28,045 bases of DNA from Octopus sinensis (lineage: Eukaryota), in NCBI RefSeq assembly GCF_006345805.1, contig NW_021832319.1, forward strand, positions 1-28,045, written 5' to 3'. Made by a program: the position numbers and the translations under genes. Under the pieces are notes generated by a model, which saw only the letters and a list, made by a program, of their open reading frames with translations, was not told where the DNA came from and searched no databases. Of this stretch, positions 4,661 to 27,930 are shown piece after piece; the stretch's first letter is position 1; the number at the start of each line of letters is the position of its first letter.

Positions 4661-4999
4661 ATAAGTTTTTTTTTAATTTAAAGATGTTTAGAGAATTTGG
4701 GCTGATGTGTGATTAATTCTCTTTGGGATATGAACATCTGACCATTAAAAGACATTTTCCAAGTTTATTCGTTTAATTTTATGTAAGATAAACAAACAGG
4801 CTAAAGTATAATCGGGCACTATCCATATTCTAGCTTTATTCGTTTATAAGTAAATATAGTAGCAGGAGTAAAGGAATCTCCTTTTGTATAATTCAATCAT
4901 GTTATCAAAATTGGTAAAAAAAATAGTCGAGTTTATGTAATTTTTTGATTTTTGTCAGAAGTTGCTGAATTTTTTAGTTGATTGAGCGAAAATAAAATT

Positions 5000-5617
5000 T
5001 TTAATAGTAAAAATTATCATTTTATTAAATAATAAACTTATGATTAAGTTAAAATCTGGTGTACCTCCCTATATTAAACAATAAAATCTTAACCAATAAC
5101 ACTGATATTTTCAAACACATTTTTATATTCAAATTCAATAATATTTTTCACCATTTTACTATCACTTTATATTCATTTAAATTACACTGATTTTAAGGAC
5201 TTTAGTCCAGCAAATGCGTCTTTTTGAATTTCTGAAATATGATTTCTGATTAAAATTCTTAAATATTTTTATCTTTTTACATTTCCTGCAGATTCTTCAA
5301 ATTTTTCAATCCAAAAGGTTGAAACAATTTTACATTGGAGCTAAGAATCAGCCTGATTTAAATTAAGTTATCACAAAAACATTTTAATAACTTTTTGACA
5401 GTCTTTAAAAAATGTTGAATTTATGGCCACAATTCGAGAATTTTGAATCAAACTTAATTACTTTAAAAATATAAAACATTTGTTTTGTGTCTTCTCTGCA
5501 TTTGATTGAATTTTGTTTATCAGAGGCGGGAAACGAGCAAACAAGTGAATGGGAGATGTCCCAACAGGCACGTGTACTTGTTATTTGAATAATATGTATA
5601 AAAATAATATAAATCAT
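5000..5617 (-). CDS. Signal peptide + LRR protein (LGR-ectodomain-like), paralog 1; 3' end unresolved
   Basis: Signal peptide and Cys cap (MIYIIFIHIIQITSTRA-CWDISHSLVCSF). GT-AG phase-2 introns at 5453-5477 (25 nt), 5353-5380 (28), 5258-5280 (23) and 5165-5185 (21) delimit three exact 72-nt LRR exons: LIQNSRIVAINSTFFKDCQKVIKM, LILSSNVKLFQPFGLKNLKNLQEI, ILIRNHISEIQKDAFAGLKSLKSV. A fifth intron at 5069-5093 follows a 71-nt exon. Confidence 0.78.
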
Positions 5618-6549: not shown

Positions 6550-7280
6550 ATAAATTATGAAAATCGGCTTATGATTAATCAAATATTTACAAAAAATTCG
6601 AAAATGTTTGAAAGGCCTATTAGCATCAAAGTATCACAATTGATAGCGAAATCAGGAAAATTTCATACTATTGGGGAGTTTTTAATATTACCAGCTGTCA
6701 AAGAAGTGTTATGATTGTGATTCTGAACAGATATTTTAATCAATTTCTTTGAGTAATAGTTCAGTCTCTTTCAGAATTGATGAAATGGCATCTGATATTT
6801 AACCTTATGTGCATTTTTAAGAACAACAAAATTTTCGATTCAAATTGATGAATCGACATTTACAGATACTGTTTCACTTTATTAATTTACGTACGTTATA
6901 TTAATCAAATAATTTAATCGAAAAAGAATTTTTATCTTCTGAACACCTTGGACTCAAAACAAGAGGGGTTAACAATTTTTGAAACTGTTGAACAATATTT
7001 GTGGAGACATGAATTACTCCTTATCAATATTATTACTTGTTCAACAGATGGAGCACCTGCGATGGTTAAAGTTCATCGTGGGTTTTTGGGATATATGAAG
7101 GAGAAAGTACCAAATATTTTTAACAATCCATTGCGTCATTCACAGACAGCATTTAGCAGCAAAAAATTTAGGTGAAGGACTAAAAGAATTATTAAATGTA
7201 GTTATCTGTGCAATAAATCGTGTTAAAATGCATCCGAGAATATTTCAACTTATATGTAAACAAAACGATGAGCATTATGA
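6550..7280 (+). mobile_element. Degraded hAT (Buster/Charlie, ZBED5/SCAND3-like) transposase
   Basis: Motifs KSGKFHTIGEFLILPAVKE, SLSNSSVSFRIDEMA, FSIQIDEST, CSTDGAPAM and HCVIHRQHL. True in-frame stops and several shifts; no TIR seen. Confidence 0.88.
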
Positions 7281-8329: not shown

Positions 8330-8860
8330 CAAATTATTTTTATGTTAATCTTTTAATGTACAATCCCGTTTCATTGCAGTTAAAAATATTTTCAATGCCA
8401 TAGTTATTAAAATAGTCATCGTACTTATCAAAAAAATTCCAAGGCAAGAAATAGCACACGATTTTTTTCACTTTGTATTATTTCAAATGACAAATTGTGT
8501 CTTTTCTTAAATTTTCAAGCCAACCATTCGAACCTCTGAATGAGGTATAGTTCAAATTCCTACCTACTTTTATAGCAACGTTTTTAAAAATAGGTCCTAA
8601 AACGGAAATTTTGCTTTTAAGAAGCATTCATAAACAATTTTATCAAATTTCTGCGACAGACTGTCTCTTATCTGTGAAATTTGACTAAGACGATATGATT
8701 GTACGGACCCATTATTTAAAGAGTTCTTGTTATTTTGTTTAATTCTAAATACTGCTCTCAAACAATAGAATTATCAGATAACCTTTACTAGTTTTATATT
8801 TTTTGACAATATCTCGTTCGCTCATGAAACAATTTTGGGACAATTTTAAGCTTTAACTCC
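8330..8860 (-). mobile_element. Tigger/pogo (CENP-B-like) transposase remnant
   Basis: SERDIVKKYKTSKG (HTH), GPIFKNVAIKVG..FRGSNGWLEN / KRHNLSF (CENP-B HTH) and YGIENIFNCNETGL (DDE start), colinear but disrupted. Confidence 0.75.
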
Positions 8861-9329
8861 AGAATAAGCTTTCTTCCCGTGACATCAAAACGCAAATCTA
8901 GCAAGCAAAGTTTGAGAAAAATTTATATAATTAAACTTAATATTAATTCCAAGACTTTATATAAATTAAATTCAGTGTGTAGAATAAGTGGTGGCCCGAC
9001 ATAATAAAGAATTCTTTGGAATAAATTTGTGATTTCTGCAGAAGATTTGGTCAACGACAGTTCAAGCATTACATATTTTGAAAAAGAATCCCCAATTACC
9101 GAAATCTATTTTAAAAGAATATTTTCTGAGGTCAATTAAATCCGCAATGTATCAGTCCCTAAATCTTCATCAATGATTGGCGTAATTAGGGGCTTCGTAG
9201 ACAATATTTTTTTCGACTAAGAATATTTACTAAAATGAGTTATTACCTGACAGAAAGCACAAAACGAAATCACCTTAGATATTTCTTCTTTGAATGAATG
9301 AATGAATTTTTTATTAAAACGGAAAAGCC

Positions 9330-11615: not shown

Positions 11616-13457
11616 TTATTTATTCTTCATTTTCGCGATTCCCCAAAAAATCGACACTCGGTCGCGAGTTTCTGATCGATTGTGAGACTTCTACAAATAA
11701 AAGCGAGGCTCAACCATGTGTACAATCACAAAAAACTGCACAAAAATTGATGTAAATAGGGACAAAACGACGTATATAAAAAAAGATATAAACAAGATCT
11801 GATACATGTCCGAAAATAATCTGAAGCGTGAATCCTCCGTTGACATCATAGTATCATTAATTATATCCCCGTTCATTATTGCAAAAAGAGAAATAGCGGA
11901 TGAGTAGAGAGTTTCAAACTAAAAATAATTGACAAAACTAGCCTTTTCATTATAGGGATGAAGAACTATCAACCCACAAAATACAAAGCCCATATACACA
12001 ATGATTATGCAGGACATGAAACGGAGGACCAAGAGGGTCGACCTAGTCAGAGTCATCATCAGGATCTTAAAATTATTTAAGCATAATATACGTTAAAACC
12101 CGAAAAGAAACTAAGATAGCGAAGGAGACCAGTCCAAATGAGAAGAATGTTAATTCCATAAGCAATCGCGAGATAAGGAGAATAAAATTGCTAAAAAATA
12201 AGCTACAGAAGAACGTGAATTTGAGTAATATAAATTCCAGTGACAACAATATTACTTATGTCAGTGAAAATAATTATGAAATTCCATATGTCGAAGTATA
12301 TTGATAATTCCGAATACGACAAACTTTCTCCCTCTATGCGAGAAAAGTAAGAATTTGTAATCTTGGCCAAATAAATGGATTTTAACACAGAACGGACACA
12401 TGTGATGAGAGATATAAAACTCACCAATAATGCCAACGAAGATACTATAAGGTGCACCGTACGGGTATAATTGAAGACTATGGTTGAGATATGACACTTA
12501 CAAAAATATCCATAAGAACGACGTTGTGCCGAACTATCAATTTTGTAAGCTTCGTTCAAGTTTGATCGAATTATGTTGACCTAAAAAGTAATTAAATAAT
12601 ATTACATTGTATTTAATTTGCTCATTCACGATGTGCTCTGAGTTATTCATCCAAGTTGTTGACATCGACATTAATTCCATTGTAAGACTTATTTTGAAGG
12701 TTCTTTAATATTCACTTTTTATCCTTACTTGGATAATAATACATTGTCAGTAAATTTTGTTATTTTTGAAACGTCAAAAGTAGTCATATTGGACAATATA
12801 TCAATTTCCTCACATACTTGAATTCATTCATAAATTAAATCAACCCCATTTAAAACTGACTTTCAAGAAATTGTTCTCTAAGTCTAATTTTGTGTTTTTA
12901 TCATCGATATGATAATAATTTAGACAAATTAGAACAGGAAAAAGATTGTTCGAGTTCAGTTTTAGGGATTATAACCAATCAATGAGTCGTTTCCAATACT
13001 GATATACTATGAATACTCAATCAAATAGTTTGTCACTTTATTTAATGTGAAATTGATATTATTCAACATTTGAGGTAGGCTCATCACAAATGGCAAATGT
13101 TCATGGCAATAAGACGGATGTTTAACAAAATCTTGGATAAAGTAACGATCAAGCGTTAAAGTCGGAATATTCGCCAGTCGAGATTGACCATAAATATAAA
13201 TCTACAATATTAAATAATTTACTTGAACAGTGAAGATTATACTTTGGCCAGTTGTGCAAACATTTTTATAGGAAGCTTTCGCTTTTCATTCCATTTTCCC
13301 ACCGGATCTTTTAAATAGTATGAAGCATAGGTCTTAAACTCATCAATATCTTCATTTAAACAATTTTTTTCTTCTAATTAGAGATATTGCACGATTAGCT
13401 CACCGCCGGGCAGTCCAATGAATGCTACGTTTTTTTGTGTTTTTTTTGACTTGACAT
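11616..13457 (-). CDS. MCOLN: Mucolipin / TRPML cation channel, 12 exons, ~520 aa after repairing three 1-nt deletions
   Basis: Introns: 13374-13403, 13202-13222, 13007-13036, 12817-12844, 12703-12728, 12581-12605, 12478-12501, 12191-12214, 12066-12091, 11919-11942 (GC-AG), 11691-11714. The spliced product has YYLKDPVGKWNEKRKLPIK, ICLNYYH, ITCVRSVLKS, WTGLLRYLSFFSGFN|ILMMTL, GFVFCGLIVLHPYNEK|FETL, SLFAIMNGD and FISFFIYVVLSLF, all mucolipin hallmarks. Frameshifts near 13443, 13241 and 12966; repaired length is 1563 nt, divisible by 3. Confidence 0.93.
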
Positions 13458-14149: not shown

Positions 14150-14620
14150 AATCGAATATACTACATCCAAAACATCCCACATTTTAGACAGCTTATAACA
14201 AAGTAACTAGAACTCAAACGAAGGCTGAAGTAATTTGCCTGCAACTTCCGGGAGGATCCCTGTCCAGTCAAGAGGCGACAACCGAACTTGCAACTGTTCT
14301 TGAAGCAAATCCATCTGCCTCCTTACTAGAGCCTCCTTCTGTAACCTACACACGCATATTGAGACCCTGAAAGCAATAAGGACAGCCAAAAATGTGTCCC
14401 CAGAGTATGACAAAATTCCAATGGCCTGTTTCAAGCTGCCGTCTCTACTTACAAACCTTTTCAATTCCAGCCTACAGAGATAATACGTTCCAAAATCATA
14501 AAAAACTGAAGTTCGGATGGTTTGAAAACCTAAAAAACCTAAAGAAAAAGTCTTAAGCTATAGCCCTATAAGCCTAATTTGCTCTACATCAAAGATAAAG
14601 AAGAGTTAAAACTTTTAGAA
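14150..14620 (+). mobile_element. Jockey/I-like LINE RT N-terminal remnant, copy 1
   Basis: AIRTAKNVSPEYDKIP..LLTNLFNSSL..KPKKPKEKVLSYSPISL matches SPGxD..LFN..KP.K..SYRPISL; alignable at DNA level to 27435-27665. Confidence 0.7.
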
Positions 14621-14925: not shown

Positions 14926-17113
14926 CAGAGGTTTCCAAATGGGGAGGCGCGCCTCCCTAGGGAGGCGTTGACTCGTGTCAAGGGAGGCGCGAAAAGTATT
15001 TCAGAAACATTTTTTAGAAAATTATATCTATGTAAAAAACGTGACTATATTCCGATAATAAGAGTTATTAATTTAAAAATTATATTTTTCAAAAATTTAT
15101 TTAATTTATTAGACAATTAAATAATTTTAACACATGAATAAATTCTTGAGTGGTTGCAAAAGAAAATTCACGAATAATAAAGATTTTGACGATGGTTCAA
15201 AAAATCAAAATGATTGGAATATAATCAATACCACTCCAAAGACAAGAAAATACTTTCCATCTTACTTATTGTTAGGATTCACACGTATCTTTGTTGATTC
15301 TATGGAAAAACCCCTCTGTTGCTTTGCCTCAAAACACTTGCAGCAGATAGTATGAGGCCATGCAAATTAAGAAGACATTTTGAAACGATGCATTCTGAAC
15401 ATGTCCATAAGTCTGAAGAATTTTTTAAAAGAAAATTAGAAGAGTTTGATAACCAAACGAAATCGTTAAAAATACTTGTTTCTGTCTCTTCAAATGCTTT
15501 ACTAGCATCGTACAAAGTTTCTTACAGGATTGCAAAATGCAAGAAACCGCACAATATCGGAGAAACTCTAGTTTTGCCAGCAGCTATCGATATGGTTGAA
15601 GCAATGTTTGGCGAATCCTATGCAAAACAATTACAGCAAATACCGCTTGCTGATAACACAGTCGCTAGAAGAATTGATGACATATCTGAAGATCTTTGTG
15701 ATCAGTTGGTTTCTCGACTACGTAACTGTAAATTGCTATACAAGTTGATGAGGGAGCTGACATAAATAAAAATGCACATTTAATTGCATATGTCAGATAT
15801 GCTGAAGAAAGTACAATAATAGAAGATCTATTATTCTGCAAACCATTTCCTGGAAGGAGCACGGCCAATGAAATTTTTATATAATTGATACTTTTTTGAA
15901 GAAAATAACATAGAATGGATCAATGTGTTGGACTTTGTACAGACGGAGCACAGTCAATGTCAGGAAATAAATCTGGTCTTCAAGCTCTTGTAAAAAACAG
16001 AGCACCAGAAATTATCTGGACGCACTGCATGCTGCACAGATCAGCACTTGTCTCAAAGAATATGAGTCCAGAACTGAACGATATTTTGCGCAAATTACAA
16101 AAGTTATAAACTACATAAAACACAGTCCTTTAAGAGCTAAGCTTTTTGCAAAGCTGTGTGAAGATATGGATTCAAAATATACATCGCTTTTATACTATTG
16201 TGAGGTACGCTGGCTATCTCGTGCAAAAGTGATTAGAAGGGTGTTTGAACTCAAAGATCAAGTTGCAGATTTTCTTGATGAAAATGATATTGAAGATGCA
16301 AAGTTGTTCAGGGATGATGACTTTATTGTCAAATTTGCCTATTTAGTTGACATTTTTGGGAAATTGAGTATATTGAATAAATCAATGCAGGGACCACAAC
16401 TACATTTATTCTCTCAAAAGGACAAAATAAAAGCATTTATGAAAAAATTGGTATTATGGAAATCAAATATACAAAAAAATATCTATGACATGTTTCCACT
16501 TTTAAACACCTTTTGCGCCATAGTGAACATTGAAGCAAACAAAGACATATTTGCTGAACATTTGGATTGTTTGTTGAAGCATTTTGCTCACTATTTTAAA
16601 GATCTCGACTGTAAAATGTTCGAATGGATACAGAATCCATTTATTGATGAAGAAGATAATCAATTTGCATTGACAACTTTTGAAAAAGAAAAATTGATAG
16701 AATTGTCATGCGATACATTATTGAAACAAAAATTGAGAGAGAACCGCTAATTTCTTTTTGGTTGAATGTAAGAACGGAATATGAAATTTTGTCGAATAAA
16801 GCAATGAAAGTTTTGTTGCCATTTGCTACTTCATATTTATGCGAAACTGGATTTTCTGCACTAGCTGCAATAAATCTAAATATCGAACTTGTTTAGTAGT
16901 GACTAATGAGCTAAGAGTAGCACTCTCTGCGATGACACCAAGATTTGAAAAACTTTGCGCCAAGATGGAAAAAAAATTATCTCATTAACTTTTTGTTTTA
17001 AAAATTGTTTTTGATAAAATAATAATTGTATTATATTATGGAATATAAAGGGAGGCGCAAGATTGTACTTTTTCTCTAAGGGAGGCGCGTAAAAAAAAGC
17101 TTGGAAACCTCTG
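14926..17113 (+). mobile_element. Full-length Buster-subfamily hAT DNA transposon (2188 bp)
   Basis: TIRs cagaggtttccaa (14926) and ttggaaacctctg (ends 17113). Perfect 8-bp TSD atttagat (14918-14925, 17114-17121) with central TA. Subterminal gggaggcg repeats at both ends. Confidence 0.96.
15134..16988 (+). CDS. Buster hAT transposase (BED finger + DDE), ~620 aa after repairing eight 1-nt deletions
   Basis: BED finger CLLC..LRRHFETMH; catalytic IQVDE, CTDGA and LCETGFS; CxxH motif HCMLH. No in-frame stops after repair; (1855+8)/3 = 621 codons. Confidence 0.9.
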
Positions 17114-18399: not shown

Positions 18400-18703
18400 C
18401 TAAATTTGGTCATCAGTCACAAATTCGCAGATTGATGTCATAAATTTCAGACTATGATTGGATATGACTATTAGATGTGTAAGTTCAAGTGACCCTTCTA
18501 TTTTTGAGCAGCCTTGGTAGAGCTTTCTATAATATTCGAGACGGTCTATTCCCCGAAAACTCGATAGCCCATTGGTAATAAAATAAAACACTGCCTCTTG
18601 GATAATAGAATTTACTTTTACTGTTTGCTTCTGAAATGAGCAAAGACAAGAGTAAAGGTGTAATTGTAAAAATATAACTAAGCAGAGTAGAAAACTAATT
18701 CAT
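18400..18703 (-). pseudogene. EGFR/ERBB-like signal peptide + receptor L-domain fragment
   Basis: ATG at 18703, TAG at codon 3, hydrophobic leader, 25-nt intron (18591-18615), then TNGLSSFRGIDRLEYYRKLYQGCSKIEGSLELTHL..SLKFMTSICE, resembling ERBB2 LYQGCQVVQGNLELTYL..SLSFLQDIQE. No intact continuation found. Confidence 0.68.
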
Positions 18704-19624: not shown

Positions 19625-20250
19625 AATCAATACTCTTTGCAATCGTTTTTTGGCAACATTATCCCGTTTACGCGTGACTTATTCTTCTTTGCCAACTTCA
19701 CTGGCTTAAGGAAAACCGATGGATGAGTTTGCCCCATCGCTGTTGGCATTACTTTAGGACGCTATCTGCTAAGATTGTTTGCAGGCTTGTCTATTCTGAT
19801 CTTGAGCCATTTTTCGAGCCTGTTCAACTTGGAGTTTCTGTTAGGAACGGATGTGAGGCTGTTGCTCATGCCTCAAGATATTATATAACCAGTGCTTCAG
19901 CTGCTTCTTGCTCTGAAAGAGGACTCCTCAAACTCGATATAAAAAACGCCTTCGGCTACATCTGTCGGAACCACTTCCTTCAAGTTTATAACGACAATTA
20001 TCATATTTTGTACCTCTTAGCTCTCACTGTGCAAAATCTGAATTAGTTAGCCTCAACCTTGTTAATGAACGCTTTGGCCATCTACTATCGTCCTTCCGCA
20101 CTAGCCTTGGTCAAGTACAGACGACTGATATCAACGATCTCCGGATTCTCGGATCCCCCATTCTTTCAACCGGTATAAAGACTAATCTTCGTATTAAACA
20201 TTCGACACTCATTCGTTTGTTGGATTGCTTTACAACTTTGGACAGCCACA
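19625..20250 (+). mobile_element. CRE-clade retrotransposon RT remnant
   Basis: FANFTGLRKTDG*VCPIAVGITL, LSAKIVC, PVQLGVSVRNGCEAVAHA, LKLDIKNAF and LRILGSPI; frameshifts, a stop and deletions. Confidence 0.85.
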
Positions 20251-21164: not shown

Positions 21165-21981
21165 TCATGAATCATCAATTTCCACATATCCAGTTATGCA
21201 TAGAATATTATATGGCTCCATGAGGTCGCATTTATCGCAGGCTATTGATAATTAAGTAAGACATACAATATGTTTCAGACAATGTAAGAGTTTTTATTGA
21301 ACGCCATTTACTTCTCAGTATAACATCTGTAGTATCAAAATATAGATAAGAATCCTTCATTGTAACCCTATATAAGAAAGTCTCTGAATACATTGTATAC
21401 TCTTCCAACTCGCCATTGTATATGCATATCTTGTTCGATGAAGACATGCTAAACAATGATTGACTAAAATACCGAATAGATGTCTTGGTCTTAAAATTAG
21501 GTTGTTTAAAAATGGAGTTCTGTGGCATTATTCTTTAAAATTAAAAATGATTATTACATTGTTTTTAAAAGGGTGAGATCTGAGAAAGCATCGACGTCAA
21601 TAAAATTCAAATTATCACAATATTTCAGATCGCTAATGATTATAAGTGTTTAGATGTACATTTCAAGCAATTTAGGCAAATTGTCAAAAGAATGTGCCCA
21701 TATTTCGTAAAATGAACTGGATTGACACTGACTATTATTAATATAAAACTTTTCAGTACAAGATTGCTGCATCTCTAAATTCAAACTCGGAATTCCATTT
21801 TGGTGGGGAATTCAGTATTTTTATAGTTCGTGGATTATCACCCCGTTCGAATAATGAATAATAGCAGTCACAGTTAAAACTAACACAAATTAATATTCAT
21901 AAAAAACTCTCCAATTTGGCTTAAATTATTTGCAGTTAAATTATTTATTAAAATTAGAGCAATAAGATAAAATCCGAGCAT
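21165..21981 (-). CDS. Signal peptide + LRR protein (glycoprotein-hormone-receptor/LGR ectodomain-like), paralog 2
   Basis: Leader MLGFYLIALILINNLTA. Phase-2 introns at 21880-21907, 21732-21759, 21633-21659 and 21533-21557; candidate introns at 21449-21472, 21368-21391 and 21242-21266. A 72-nt exon (QCQSSSFYEIWAHSFDNLPKLLEI) and a 75-nt exon (DLKYCDNLNFIDVDAFSDLTLLKTI) resemble TSHR exons (..ESHSFYNLSKVTHI / [25 protein letters not shown]). Stop at 21165-21167; no 7TM domain seen. Confidence 0.8.
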
Positions 21982-27429: not shown

Positions 27430-27930
27430 TAGCGGCCCCGGAGTATGACAAGATTCAAATGGTCTGTTTTAAAAATGCGCCGAATTTTTTGGTGTTTTTG
27501 CTTACAAACCTTTTCAATTCCAGTCTGTAGAAAGTATACGTTTCCAAATCATGAAAAAAAACTGGATTTTGAATGGTTCGAAAACCTAAGAAACATAAAG
27601 AAAAGGTCTTAAGCTATAGGCATATAAGCCTAATTTGTTCTACTTTAAAGAAAACGAAGAAAATCATTTATAACAGGCTAGTGTTGAATATAGAAAAAAA
27701 TCACTGACCTTATCACAATCAGTGGAGTTTTCGTCCGGGGCGGTTTCGTGCTAACTACATCTATCGACTGAATTCTTTAGTATCCAAAGCACAGAATTCT
27801 GCTTATCGACCACTATCATCTGTTTCGATGTGTCGAATGGTTTACACAGTGTCTGTCACTCCGTATTGGTAGAAAATCTTAGAAACTGTCAAATTGATGC
27901 AAAAACACTTGGCTGGTCAGCGAGTTTTTC
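27430..27930 (+). mobile_element. Jockey/I-like LINE RT remnant, copy 2
   Basis: Aligns with 14397-14620, then continues FRPG..FDVSNGLHSVCHSVLVENLRNCQIDAKTLGW (degenerate QxGFRxGRS / DxxxAFDxVxH motifs). Confidence 0.7.

What the first reader, a model, noticed from the sequence alone, without database searches (positions are those of the whole stretch)
11616..13457. Metazoan gene architecture built from 21-30 nt spliceosomal introns
Seen: the 11 mucolipin introns measure 30, 21, 30, 28, 26, 25, 24, 24, 26, 24 and 24 nt. The two LRR genes and the EGFR-like fragment add introns of 21-28 nt. Donors are very degenerate (GTGAGC, GTTGAT, GTTCTT, GTATAT, GCTAGT) and there is little room for a branch point or polypyrimidine tract. 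Established: such tiny introns are exceptional in animals and are reported for dicyemid mesozoans; myxozoans also have short introns. Several junctions (FN|IL, EK|FE, and the junction after the last helix) appear to match vertebrate MCOLN intron positions. Inference: ancestral introns were shrunk in place and are spliced mainly by length definition.
Basis: partly seen in the sequence, partly recalled or inferred. Interest (0 to 1): 0.72.

Follow-up and report, generated by a model that had tools for sequence, protein, structure and literature searches.

The report
Tiny introns in an animal mucolipin gene
A mucolipin ion-channel gene of a fast-evolving animal, probably a myxozoan or dicyemid parasite, is split by eleven real introns of only 21-30 bases at the same places as frog introns of hundreds to thousands of bases, a pattern already published for those two parasite groups.

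Summary
On the minus strand, 13457-11616 encodes a TRPML/mucolipin homologue.

They are real introns at ancestral positions. Ten of the 11 match, in order and phase, the introns of two frog MCOLN genes. Six fall in the identical alignment column, and exon sizes match to the base (97=97, 123=123, 263=113+150).

Two LRR genes in the window show the same architecture: one 72-nt repeat per exon, with 21-28 nt introns.

Two are single-base homopolymer undercalls. The third is either another undercall or a twelfth intron of 26 nt. A neighbouring hAT transposase has eight such breaks, all -1 and all in homopolymers, which points to long-read assembly error rather than a pseudogene.

The phenomenon is already published, for dicyemids in 2010 and 2019 and for myxobolid myxozoans in 2026. 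The source organism could not be identified. "Spliced by length definition" is untested. This is a well-supported but known finding of low novelty.

The parts
11616..13457 (-). TRPML/mucolipin gene, ATG to TAA; 12 or 13 exons
   Evidence: PDB MCOLN1-3 E about 1e-33 with a near full-length alignment. Pfam PKD_channel. Homologues are animal mucolipins at about 28% identity.
13425..13450 (-). Candidate extra intron of 26 nt (GTCAAAAAAAACACAAAAAAACGTAG), which puts the ATG in frame (MSTFIGLPGEEKN...). The alternative is a missing A in the A8 run.
   Evidence: Without it, ATG 13457 runs into TAG at 13427-13425.
13374..13403 (-). Intron 1: 30 nt, GTGAGC..TTAG, phase 1
   Evidence: In-frame stop if retained. 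N-terminal region cannot be compared with the frog genes.
13243..13245 (-). AAA run where one base is missing; the frame shifts by -1 between ...MFAQLAK and (S)IIFTVQ
   Evidence: Both flanks align without a gap to KLFLQVLKIVMVTTQ of the frog protein.
13202..13222 (-). Intron 2: 21 nt, GTAAAT..GTAG, phase 0, junction TVQ|IYI
   Evidence: Same column and phase as the frog introns TTQ|LVL and TIQ|LVL.
13007..13036 (-). Intron 3: 30 nt, GTGACA..ATAG, phase 0, junction LNK|YIS
   Evidence: Same column and phase as the frog intron IDQ|YRR.
12965..12967 (-). CCC run where one base is missing; the frame shifts by -1 between ...LIGYNP and LKLNSNNLFPVLICLNYYH
   Evidence: The conserved Cys/YYH segment of the luminal domain continues in the -1 frame.
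12817..12844 (-). Intron 4: 28 nt, GTTGAT..CAAG, phase 1, before VCEEID
   Evidence: Same column and phase as the frog intron before ECLHIE.
12703..12728 (-). Intron 5: 26 nt, GTAAGG..AAAG, phase 2, within the K of LLSK
   Evidence: Same column and phase as the frog intron within the R of FEFYR.
12581..12605 (-). Intron 6: 25 nt, GTAATA..TTAG, phase 0, junction KYN|VNI
   Evidence: Same phase as the frog intron HNK|IIF. The preceding exon is 97 nt in both species.
12478..12501 (-). Intron 7: 24 nt, GTAAGT..ATAG, phase 1. This is the only interval that is in frame and stop-free if retained.
   Evidence: Same phase as the frog intron AGS|TQK. It lies 263 nt from the next shared intron in both species.
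12191..12214 (-). Intron 8: 24 nt, GTTCTT..TTAG, phase 0, junction QIH|QFY
   Evidence: Within one column of the frog intron KAK|NLS, same phase.
12066..12091 (-). Intron 9: 26 nt, GTATAT..TAAG, phase 0, junction GFN|ILM
   Evidence: Same column and phase as the frog intron KYN|VLI.
11919..11942 (-). Intron 10: 24 nt, GC-AG (GCTAGT..TTAG), phase 0, junction NEK|FET
   Evidence: Same column and phase as the frog intron HEK|FED. The exon before it is 123 nt in both species.
11691..11714 (-). Intron 11: 24 nt, GTTGAG..GTAG, phase 0, junction VHM|KSH
   Evidence: Within one column of the frog intron TIK|KYQ, same phase.
4955..5617 (-). LRR gene 1. Exons of 78/72/72/71 nt are separated by introns 5477-5453 (25), 5374-5353 (22), 5280-5258 (23) and 5185-5165 (21), all phase 2.
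   Evidence: Pfam LRR_8 E 1e-8. The LRR period continues across each junction.
21165..21981 (-). LRR gene 2. Exons of 120/72/75 nt are separated by introns 21907-21880 (28), 21759-21732 (28), 21659-21633 (27) and 21557-21533 (25). 21266-21242 (25) is less certain.
   Evidence: Pfam LRR_8 E 5e-5, below the curated cut-off. Frames and junctions.
18424..18543 (-). Exon resembling the start of an ErbB/EGFR receptor L domain
   Evidence: All 29 PDB hits are ErbB2 or let-23, best E 0.005. No Pfam hit.
15134..16985 (+). hAT (ZBED5/Buster-like) transposase copy, used here as a yardstick of assembly quality
   Evidence: Matches the 624-aa P0021 end to end at 68% identity. It has 8 frame switches, all -1, all in homopolymers, with no nonsense substitutions.

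Best explanation
These are ordinary U2-type (GT-AG, one GC-AG) spliceosomal introns of an animal mucolipin gene. They were inherited from the common ancestor shared with vertebrates and reduced in place to 21-30 nt. The exon-intron map stayed almost unchanged: one ancestral intron was lost and none was demonstrably gained.

The host genome is a compact, fast-evolving, transposon-rich animal genome. It most probably belongs to a myxobolid myxozoan or a dicyemid, the two animal lineages in which such introns are already documented.

Shown here: the termini, lengths, positions, phases and the consequences of retention.

Inferred: recognition happens across the intron (intron definition) by the normal spliceosome, using minimal signals (GTa ... 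weakly T-rich ... AG). Unspliced transcripts are non-productive, because 10 of the 11 intervals carry an in-frame stop or shift the frame.

The residual frame breaks in the given sequence are homopolymer undercalls of a long-read assembly, not biology.
For: - Lengths and termini are exact.
- The spliced product aligns end to end with MCOLN1-3.
- Exact gene structures of two frog MCOLN genes, mapped onto a MAFFT alignment, give 6 identical column-and-phase matches and 2 within one column.
- The remaining 2 match in phase and are fixed by equal exon sizes: 97=97, 263=113+150, 123=123.
- Retention gives a stop or a frameshift in 10 of 11 introns.
- Intron GC is 26% against 33% in exons.
- The same architecture appears in two LRR genes, with 72-nt exons in phase 2.
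- The terminal stop is TAA and there are no in-frame TAA/TAG codons in exons, so the standard genetic code applies.
- All 8 hAT frameshifts are -1 in homopolymers, and both mucolipin breaks are of the same kind.
- Literature: median intron 27 nt in Dicyema sp. (PMC6543705); 27 nt in Henneguya salminicola and 22 nt in T. kitauei and M. rasmusseni, with the 5' splice site reduced to GTa and U2 snRNA and U2AF retained (PMC13644364).
Against: - There is no RNA evidence, so splicing itself is inferred.
- The sequence as given is not an intact ORF (3 breaks), so a recently inactivated gene cannot be formally excluded.
- Intron 7 is in frame and stop-free and could be retained as coding sequence.
- No branch-point motif is detectable in this small sample.
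- The source organism was not identified. No homologue exceeded 28% identity over the full protein, and none exceeded 44% over the pore exon.
Confidence: 0.85

Rival explanations
1. The locus is a decaying pseudogene. The frame breaks are real mutations, and the short intervals are relics of introns that are no longer spliced into a functional mRNA.
For: Three frame breaks remain after removing the 11 introns. The pore filter reads NGDI instead of NGDD.
Against: - There are no nonsense substitutions anywhere in about 511 codons.
- The breaks are all -1 in homopolymers, the same signature as 8 of 8 breaks in an otherwise intact transposase 2 kb away.
- Homology continues on both sides of each break without a gap.
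Confidence: 0.06
2. The sequence is correct, and the reading frame is kept by larger alternative introns: 41 nt (13242-13202) instead of 21 nt, and a 91-nt intron (12978-12888) inside exon 4.
For: Both alternatives have GT-AG ends and restore the frame arithmetically. This is my reading.
Against: - They would delete SIIFTVQ in transmembrane helix 1 and a 31-residue luminal segment with the conserved Cys and YYH. Both align to vertebrate residues in the shifted frame.
- The 41-nt version moves the junction 7 codons away from the conserved position.
- 91 nt lies far outside the 21-30 nt class.
Confidence: 0.04
3. The window is not from an animal but from a protist with tiny introns, such as a ciliate or a chlorarachniophyte nucleomorph.
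For: Intron lengths of 20-30 nt are typical of Paramecium, from my own knowledge. PKD/mucolipin-like channels occur in protists.
Against: - The stop codon is TAA and no in-frame TAA/TAG occurs in exons, which rules out the ciliate code.
- All full-length homologues are animal mucolipins, the best being a scyphozoan.
- Ten intron positions are shared with vertebrates.
- An ErbB-like exon is present.
Confidence: 0.02

Closest known systems
Ultra-short introns of myxobolid myxozoans (Henneguya salminicola, Thelohanellus kitauei, Myxobolus spp.; Hadjez et al. 2026, PMC13644364)
   Same: - Animal genes with median introns of 22-27 nt at conserved positions.
- The 5' splice site is reduced to about GTa.
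- AT-rich genome: 29% GC in H. salminicola, about 32% in this window.
- Long-read assemblies.
- The best mucolipin hit here is a cnidarian.
   Different: - Source identity is unproven.
- Only 3 of 19 introns here are 22 nt or shorter, which fits H. salminicola (median 27) better than T. kitauei or M. rasmusseni (median 22).
- No myxozoan homologue was retrieved.
Dicyemid mesozoan introns (Ogino et al. 2010, as cited in PMC6543705; Lu et al. 2019, PMC6736024; Zverkov et al. 2019, PMC6543705)
   Same: [quoted passage not shown]
- Repeat-rich genome: 49% repeats in D. japonicum.
- The assembly is partly PacBio RS II.
   Different: - D. japonicum GC is 36.7% against about 32% here.
- The paper reports only a bare AG at the 3' splice site, while this sample shows a weak T-rich stretch before the AG (by eye, 19 introns).
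- Identity is unproven.
Ciliate tiny introns (Paramecium 20-30 nt, Stentor 15-16 nt)
   Same: - Same length class and a narrow length distribution.
- Most 3n introns carry in-frame stops: 6 of 7 here.
   Different: - Different kingdom and genetic code.
- The stop enrichment here is not significant. I estimate about 60% would be expected from composition alone.
Vertebrate MCOLN1-3 genes
   Same: - Same protein family.
- 10 shared intron positions and phases.
- Near-identical exon sizes.
   Different: - Frog introns are 72-4533 nt, against 21-30 nt here.
- One frog intron (LQK|RF) is absent here, and the C-terminal intron is absent with the shorter tail.
- About 25-28% protein identity.

Membership tests
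U2-type spliceosomal introns | GT (rarely GC) at the 5' end and AG at the 3' end | tested here: met
   10 GT-AG and 1 GC-AG.
U2-type spliceosomal introns | Removal restores a continuous reading frame that is colinear with orthologues | tested here: met
   Every one of the 11 junctions joins segments that align without a gap to MCOLN. The remaining breaks lie inside exons, at homopolymers.
U2-type spliceosomal introns | Position and phase shared with introns of orthologous genes | tested here: met
   10 of 11 are shared with two frog genes.
U2-type spliceosomal introns | Branch-point adenosine, and a polypyrimidine tract upstream of the AG | tested here: inconclusive
   YTNAY occurs in 7 of 11 introns against 5.8 expected, P=0.31. 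There is only a weak T excess at positions -5 and -6 (by eye, 19 introns).
U2-type spliceosomal introns | Absent from mature mRNA | not testable with these tools
   No transcript data for the source organism are available.
TRPML / mucolipin channels | Six-transmembrane PKD-type channel domain, with full-length similarity to MCOLN1-3 that includes the S1-S2 luminal domain | tested here: met
   - Pfam PF08016 scores 29.5 bits, above the cut-off of 22.4.
- PDB MCOLN2 E 8e-34 over residues 23-493.
- PKD2L1 scores only E 1e-3.
- The luminal-domain cysteines align.
Animal genomes with ultra-short introns (Dicyemida, Myxobolidae) | Bulk of introns below 30 nt | tested here: met
   19 confident introns in three genes span 21-30 nt with a median of 25. 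This is a window sample only, not genome-wide.
Animal genomes with ultra-short introns (Dicyemida, Myxobolidae) | Source organism belongs to one of these clades | tested here: inconclusive
   No close relative appears in any collection. The best hit is a scyphozoan, at 159 bits against 150 for a mite.

The most novel reading that the evidence does not exclude
The window comes from an animal lineage other than Dicyemida or Myxobolidae. That would make it a third independent origin of sub-30-nt introns in Metazoa, with near-complete retention of ancestral intron positions.
Probability: 0.1. Interest if true: 0.6.

Novelty: already known. Interest (0 to 1): 0.2.

Why it matters
This locus is a clean single-gene illustration that introns can shrink to about 21-30 nt without moving. 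Ten of eleven sit exactly where frog introns of up to 4.5 kb sit, and exon sizes are conserved to the base. That pattern bears on the minimal requirements for spliceosome assembly and on intron shrinkage during genome compaction in parasites. The phenomenon and this interpretation have already been published for dicyemids (2010, 2019) and myxobolid myxozoans (2014 in passing, 2026), so the finding confirms rather than discovers.

There is also a practical point. The assembly carries frequent homopolymer undercalls, which will break gene models and shift apparent intron lengths and 3n classes by one base.

Tried and rejected
- **Intron-aware gene finder.** A dynamic-programming search allowing 18-60 nt GT-AG introns predicts spliced ORFs everywhere, including antisense to real genes. 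Tiny-intron models therefore mean nothing without homology, and I used it only for the LRR coordinates.
- **Organism identification, all unsuccessful.**
  - The full mucolipin search found nothing above 28% identity.
  - An exact look-up of a window ORF found nothing.
  - The hAT transposase search returned unnamed metagenome and Logan proteins at 62-73% identity, then arthropods and fish.
  - Two of those hits lie on long contigs of one ENA assembly, ERZ22157276, from an unknown eukaryote.
  - A LINE/RT-like query found nothing.
  - A search with the pore exon against 1.84 billion representatives gave 14 weak hits, and the named ones are oomycetes.
  - Rfam found no RNA genes.
- **Branch-point motif test.** Not significant.
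- **In-frame stops in 3n introns as a surveillance signal.** Six of 7 is not above what composition predicts.
- **Alternative 20-nt, 41-nt and 91-nt introns as frame fixes.** Rejected, because they delete conserved residues.
- **A 15-nt GT-AG alternative to the GC-AG intron 10.** Rejected, because the GC-AG version sits exactly at the conserved K|F junction.

Full report
**What is there**

Reading the minus strand from 13457 to 11616 gives a gene whose coding segments switch frame every 80-260 nt. Eleven short GT/GC...AG intervals were located by exact string search. Removing them leaves segments that together encode a mucolipin (TRPML) channel.
- PDB sequence search: human MCOLN2 E 8e-34, aligned over residues 23-493 of the query. 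MCOLN1 and MCOLN3 score similarly, and PKD2L1 only 1e-3.
- Pfam PKD_channel scores above its curated cut-off.
- In 5.8 billion clustered proteins, all 16 hits are mucolipin-type channels at 24-35% identity (about 28% at best over the full length), and every named one is from an animal. The best is from the scyphozoan Sanderia malayensis.

**Are they real introns?**

The decisive test was intron position. I fetched the genomic loci of two frog homologues: Spea bombifrons mucolipin-2 (P0006, L001) and Hymenochirus boettgeri mucolipin-3 (P0015, L003). I derived their exact exon-intron structures by requiring the spliced translation to equal the deposited protein.

On a MAFFT alignment:
- Window introns 2, 3, 4, 5, 9 and 10 fall in the same column and phase as introns of both frogs.
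- Introns 8 and 11 are one column off, in the same phase.
- Introns 6 and 7 lie in a gappy region, but they have the same phase and order as the corresponding frog introns.

Exon sizes settle the last two. The exon before intron 6 is 97 nt in both species. The distance from intron 7 to intron 8 is 263 nt here and 113+150 nt in Spea, where it is split by one further intron that this gene lacks. The exon before intron 10 is 123 nt in both. The pore exon is 204 nt against 207 nt.

Ten of the 11 introns are therefore ancestral. The frog counterparts are 72-4533 nt long. Six exact matches among 10 introns, with 11 target sites in about 1400 possible site-phase combinations, has a chance probability near 5e-11 by my estimate. 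By contrast a mite homologue keeps only two introns, at other positions, and a caddisfly homologue has none.

Independent support comes from the consequences of retention. Six of the seven intervals whose length is a multiple of three carry an in-frame stop. All four others shift the frame into early stops. Only intron 7 (24 nt, GTAAGT...ATAG) is in frame and stop-free. The intervals are 26% GC against 33% for the exons.

**Other genes in the window**

Two LRR genes on the minus strand show the same architecture (Pfam LRR_8).
- LRR1 has exons of 78/72/72/71 nt, separated by 25, 22, 23 and 21 nt.
- LRR2 has exons of 120/72/75 nt, separated by 28, 28, 27 and 25 nt.
- All junctions are in phase 2, so there is one 24-residue repeat per exon.

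With the mucolipin gene this gives 19 confident introns of 21-30 nt, median 25. The 'EGFR-like fragment' rests on one exon of about 40 residues. Its only PDB matches are ErbB2 and let-23 domain I, best E 0.005, and Pfam finds nothing.

With only these 11 introns the coding sequence is not open. Three frame changes remain, each equivalent to one missing base.
- Two lie inside exons, at an AAA run (13245-13243) and a CCC run (12967-12965). The protein continues to align to vertebrate residues, without a gap, in the shifted frame on both sides.
- The third is in exon 1, where the ATG at 13457 runs into a TAG. A ninth A in the A8 run would fix it. So would a twelfth intron of 26 nt (13450-13425, GTCAAAAAAAACACAAAAAAACGTAG), which gives MSTFIGLPGEEKN.... 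I cannot choose between these two.

A nearby hAT (ZBED5/Buster-like) transposase copy at 15134-16985 served as a yardstick. It matches an intact 624-residue protein end to end at 68% identity. It has eight frame switches, every one of them -1, and every one at a homopolymer (tt, tt, T5, T6, gg, A4, aa, A3). It has no nonsense substitutions.

Ten or eleven out of ten or eleven breaks of the same kind is the signature of homopolymer undercalling in a long-read assembly, not of mutational decay. The gene is therefore most likely intact in the organism. Intron lengths that include T runs (introns 6, 8, 10 and 11) may be one base short.

Alternative fixes by larger introns (41 nt and 91 nt) work arithmetically. 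They would delete conserved residues, so I reject them.

**How it works**

Shown: canonical termini, ancestral positions and phases, a narrow length class, and non-productive retention for 10 of the 11 introns.

Inferred: splicing by the normal U2-type machinery, recognising each intron as a unit. In 11 introns a YTNAY branch motif is neither enriched nor depleted (7 observed, 5.8 expected, P=0.31). The sample says nothing either way about a branch point.

[quoted passage not shown] 'Spliced mainly by length definition' therefore remains speculation.

**Comparison with what is known**

The phenomenon is published.
- Zverkov et al. 2019 give a median of 27 nt for Dicyema sp. (PMC6543705).
- Lu et al. 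2019 give a mean of 38 nt for D. japonicum (PMC6736024).
- Hadjez et al. 2026 show medians of 27 nt in Henneguya salminicola and 22 nt in T. kitauei and M. rasmusseni. They conclude that sub-30-nt introns arose at least twice in animals (PMC13644364).

**Source organism**

I could not identify it. No close relative of any window protein exists in the collections. The hints are weak.
- The best mucolipin hit is cnidarian.
- Window GC is about 32%, against 29.1% for H. salminicola and 36.7% for D. japonicum.
- The window is transposon-rich, and its errors are of the long-read type. That fits several candidates: ONT-only M. rasmusseni (PMC11557904), the PacBio-based H. salminicola assembly, and the partly PacBio RS II D. 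japonicum assembly.
- Only 3 of the 19 introns are 22 nt or shorter. That fits a median near 25-27 better than a median of 22.

My rough split is 55% myxobolid, 30% dicyemid and 15% other or undetermined, of which about 10 points are a third animal lineage with such introns and the rest is non-animal or unresolved.

**Verdict**

The main inference, that ancestral introns shrank in place, is strongly supported. The mechanistic claim is untested. Novelty is low because the pattern is already described in the literature. The added value is the quantitative position and exon-size match for this gene, and the recognition that the assembly carries systematic homopolymer deletions.

Noticed in passing
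window 15134-16985 (+); also 13243-13245 and 12965-12967 (-): The assembly has systematic single-base homopolymer undercalls. There are 8 in 1.85 kb of a hAT transposase and 2-3 in the mucolipin gene, all -1. Gene models, and intron lengths and 3n classes, from this assembly need polishing before use.
   Followed up: yes
window 15134-16985 (+): A near-intact hAT (ZBED5/Buster-like) transposase. It is 62-73% identical to unnamed metagenome and Logan proteins, 68-69% to partial copies in the caddisfly Arctopsyche grandis, and only about 45% to fish copies. The patchy distribution suggests horizontal transfer.
   Followed up: partly
window 6586-7278 (+): A second, decayed hAT-like copy, 23% identical to P0021 and with several stops.
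   Followed up: no
window about 11880 (-), exon 11: The pore selectivity filter reads N-G-D-I (AIMNGDIIND), where frog and human mucolipins have N-G-D-D. The second acidic residue is lost, which may alter cation selectivity.
   Followed up: no
window 11620-11625 (-): An AATAAA polyadenylation-like hexamer overlaps the TAA stop codon of the mucolipin gene (…AAGAATAAATAA). This is consistent with a very compact 3' end.
   Followed up: no
window 14398-14604 and 27436-27660; 996-1076 and 19932-20012: Two dispersed repeat pairs at 77-78% identity. They lie in regions whose translations look like LINE/reverse-transcriptase fragments. A protein search with a 281-aa query stitched from 26.97-27.95 kb (LINE/RT-like plus C-terminal motif) found nothing.
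   Followed up: partly
window 8343-9105 (-): The translation contains motifs reminiscent of pogo/Tigger DDE transposases (…FRGSNGWLENLRK…, …NCNETGLYIK…). This is recognised from memory only, and there was no Pfam hit at E<0.01.
   Followed up: no
window 5094-5164 (-): The fourth repeat exon of LRR gene 1 is 71 nt where its neighbours are 72 nt, and the frame is lost after it. This is probably another homopolymer undercall.
   Followed up: no
mucolipin introns 2, 3, 8, 10, 11: All five phase-0 introns whose length is a multiple of three end in TAG, so the acceptor itself is an in-frame stop if the intron is retained. With 8 of 11 acceptors being TAG this is not significant (about 0.12), but it is worth testing genome-wide.
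   Followed up: partly
L005 and L006 (ENA ERZ22157276, contigs of 1.48 Mb and 380 kb): An unidentified eukaryote in a public metagenome assembly carries hAT copies 65-70% identical to the window's element, in gene-poor surroundings.
   Followed up: no
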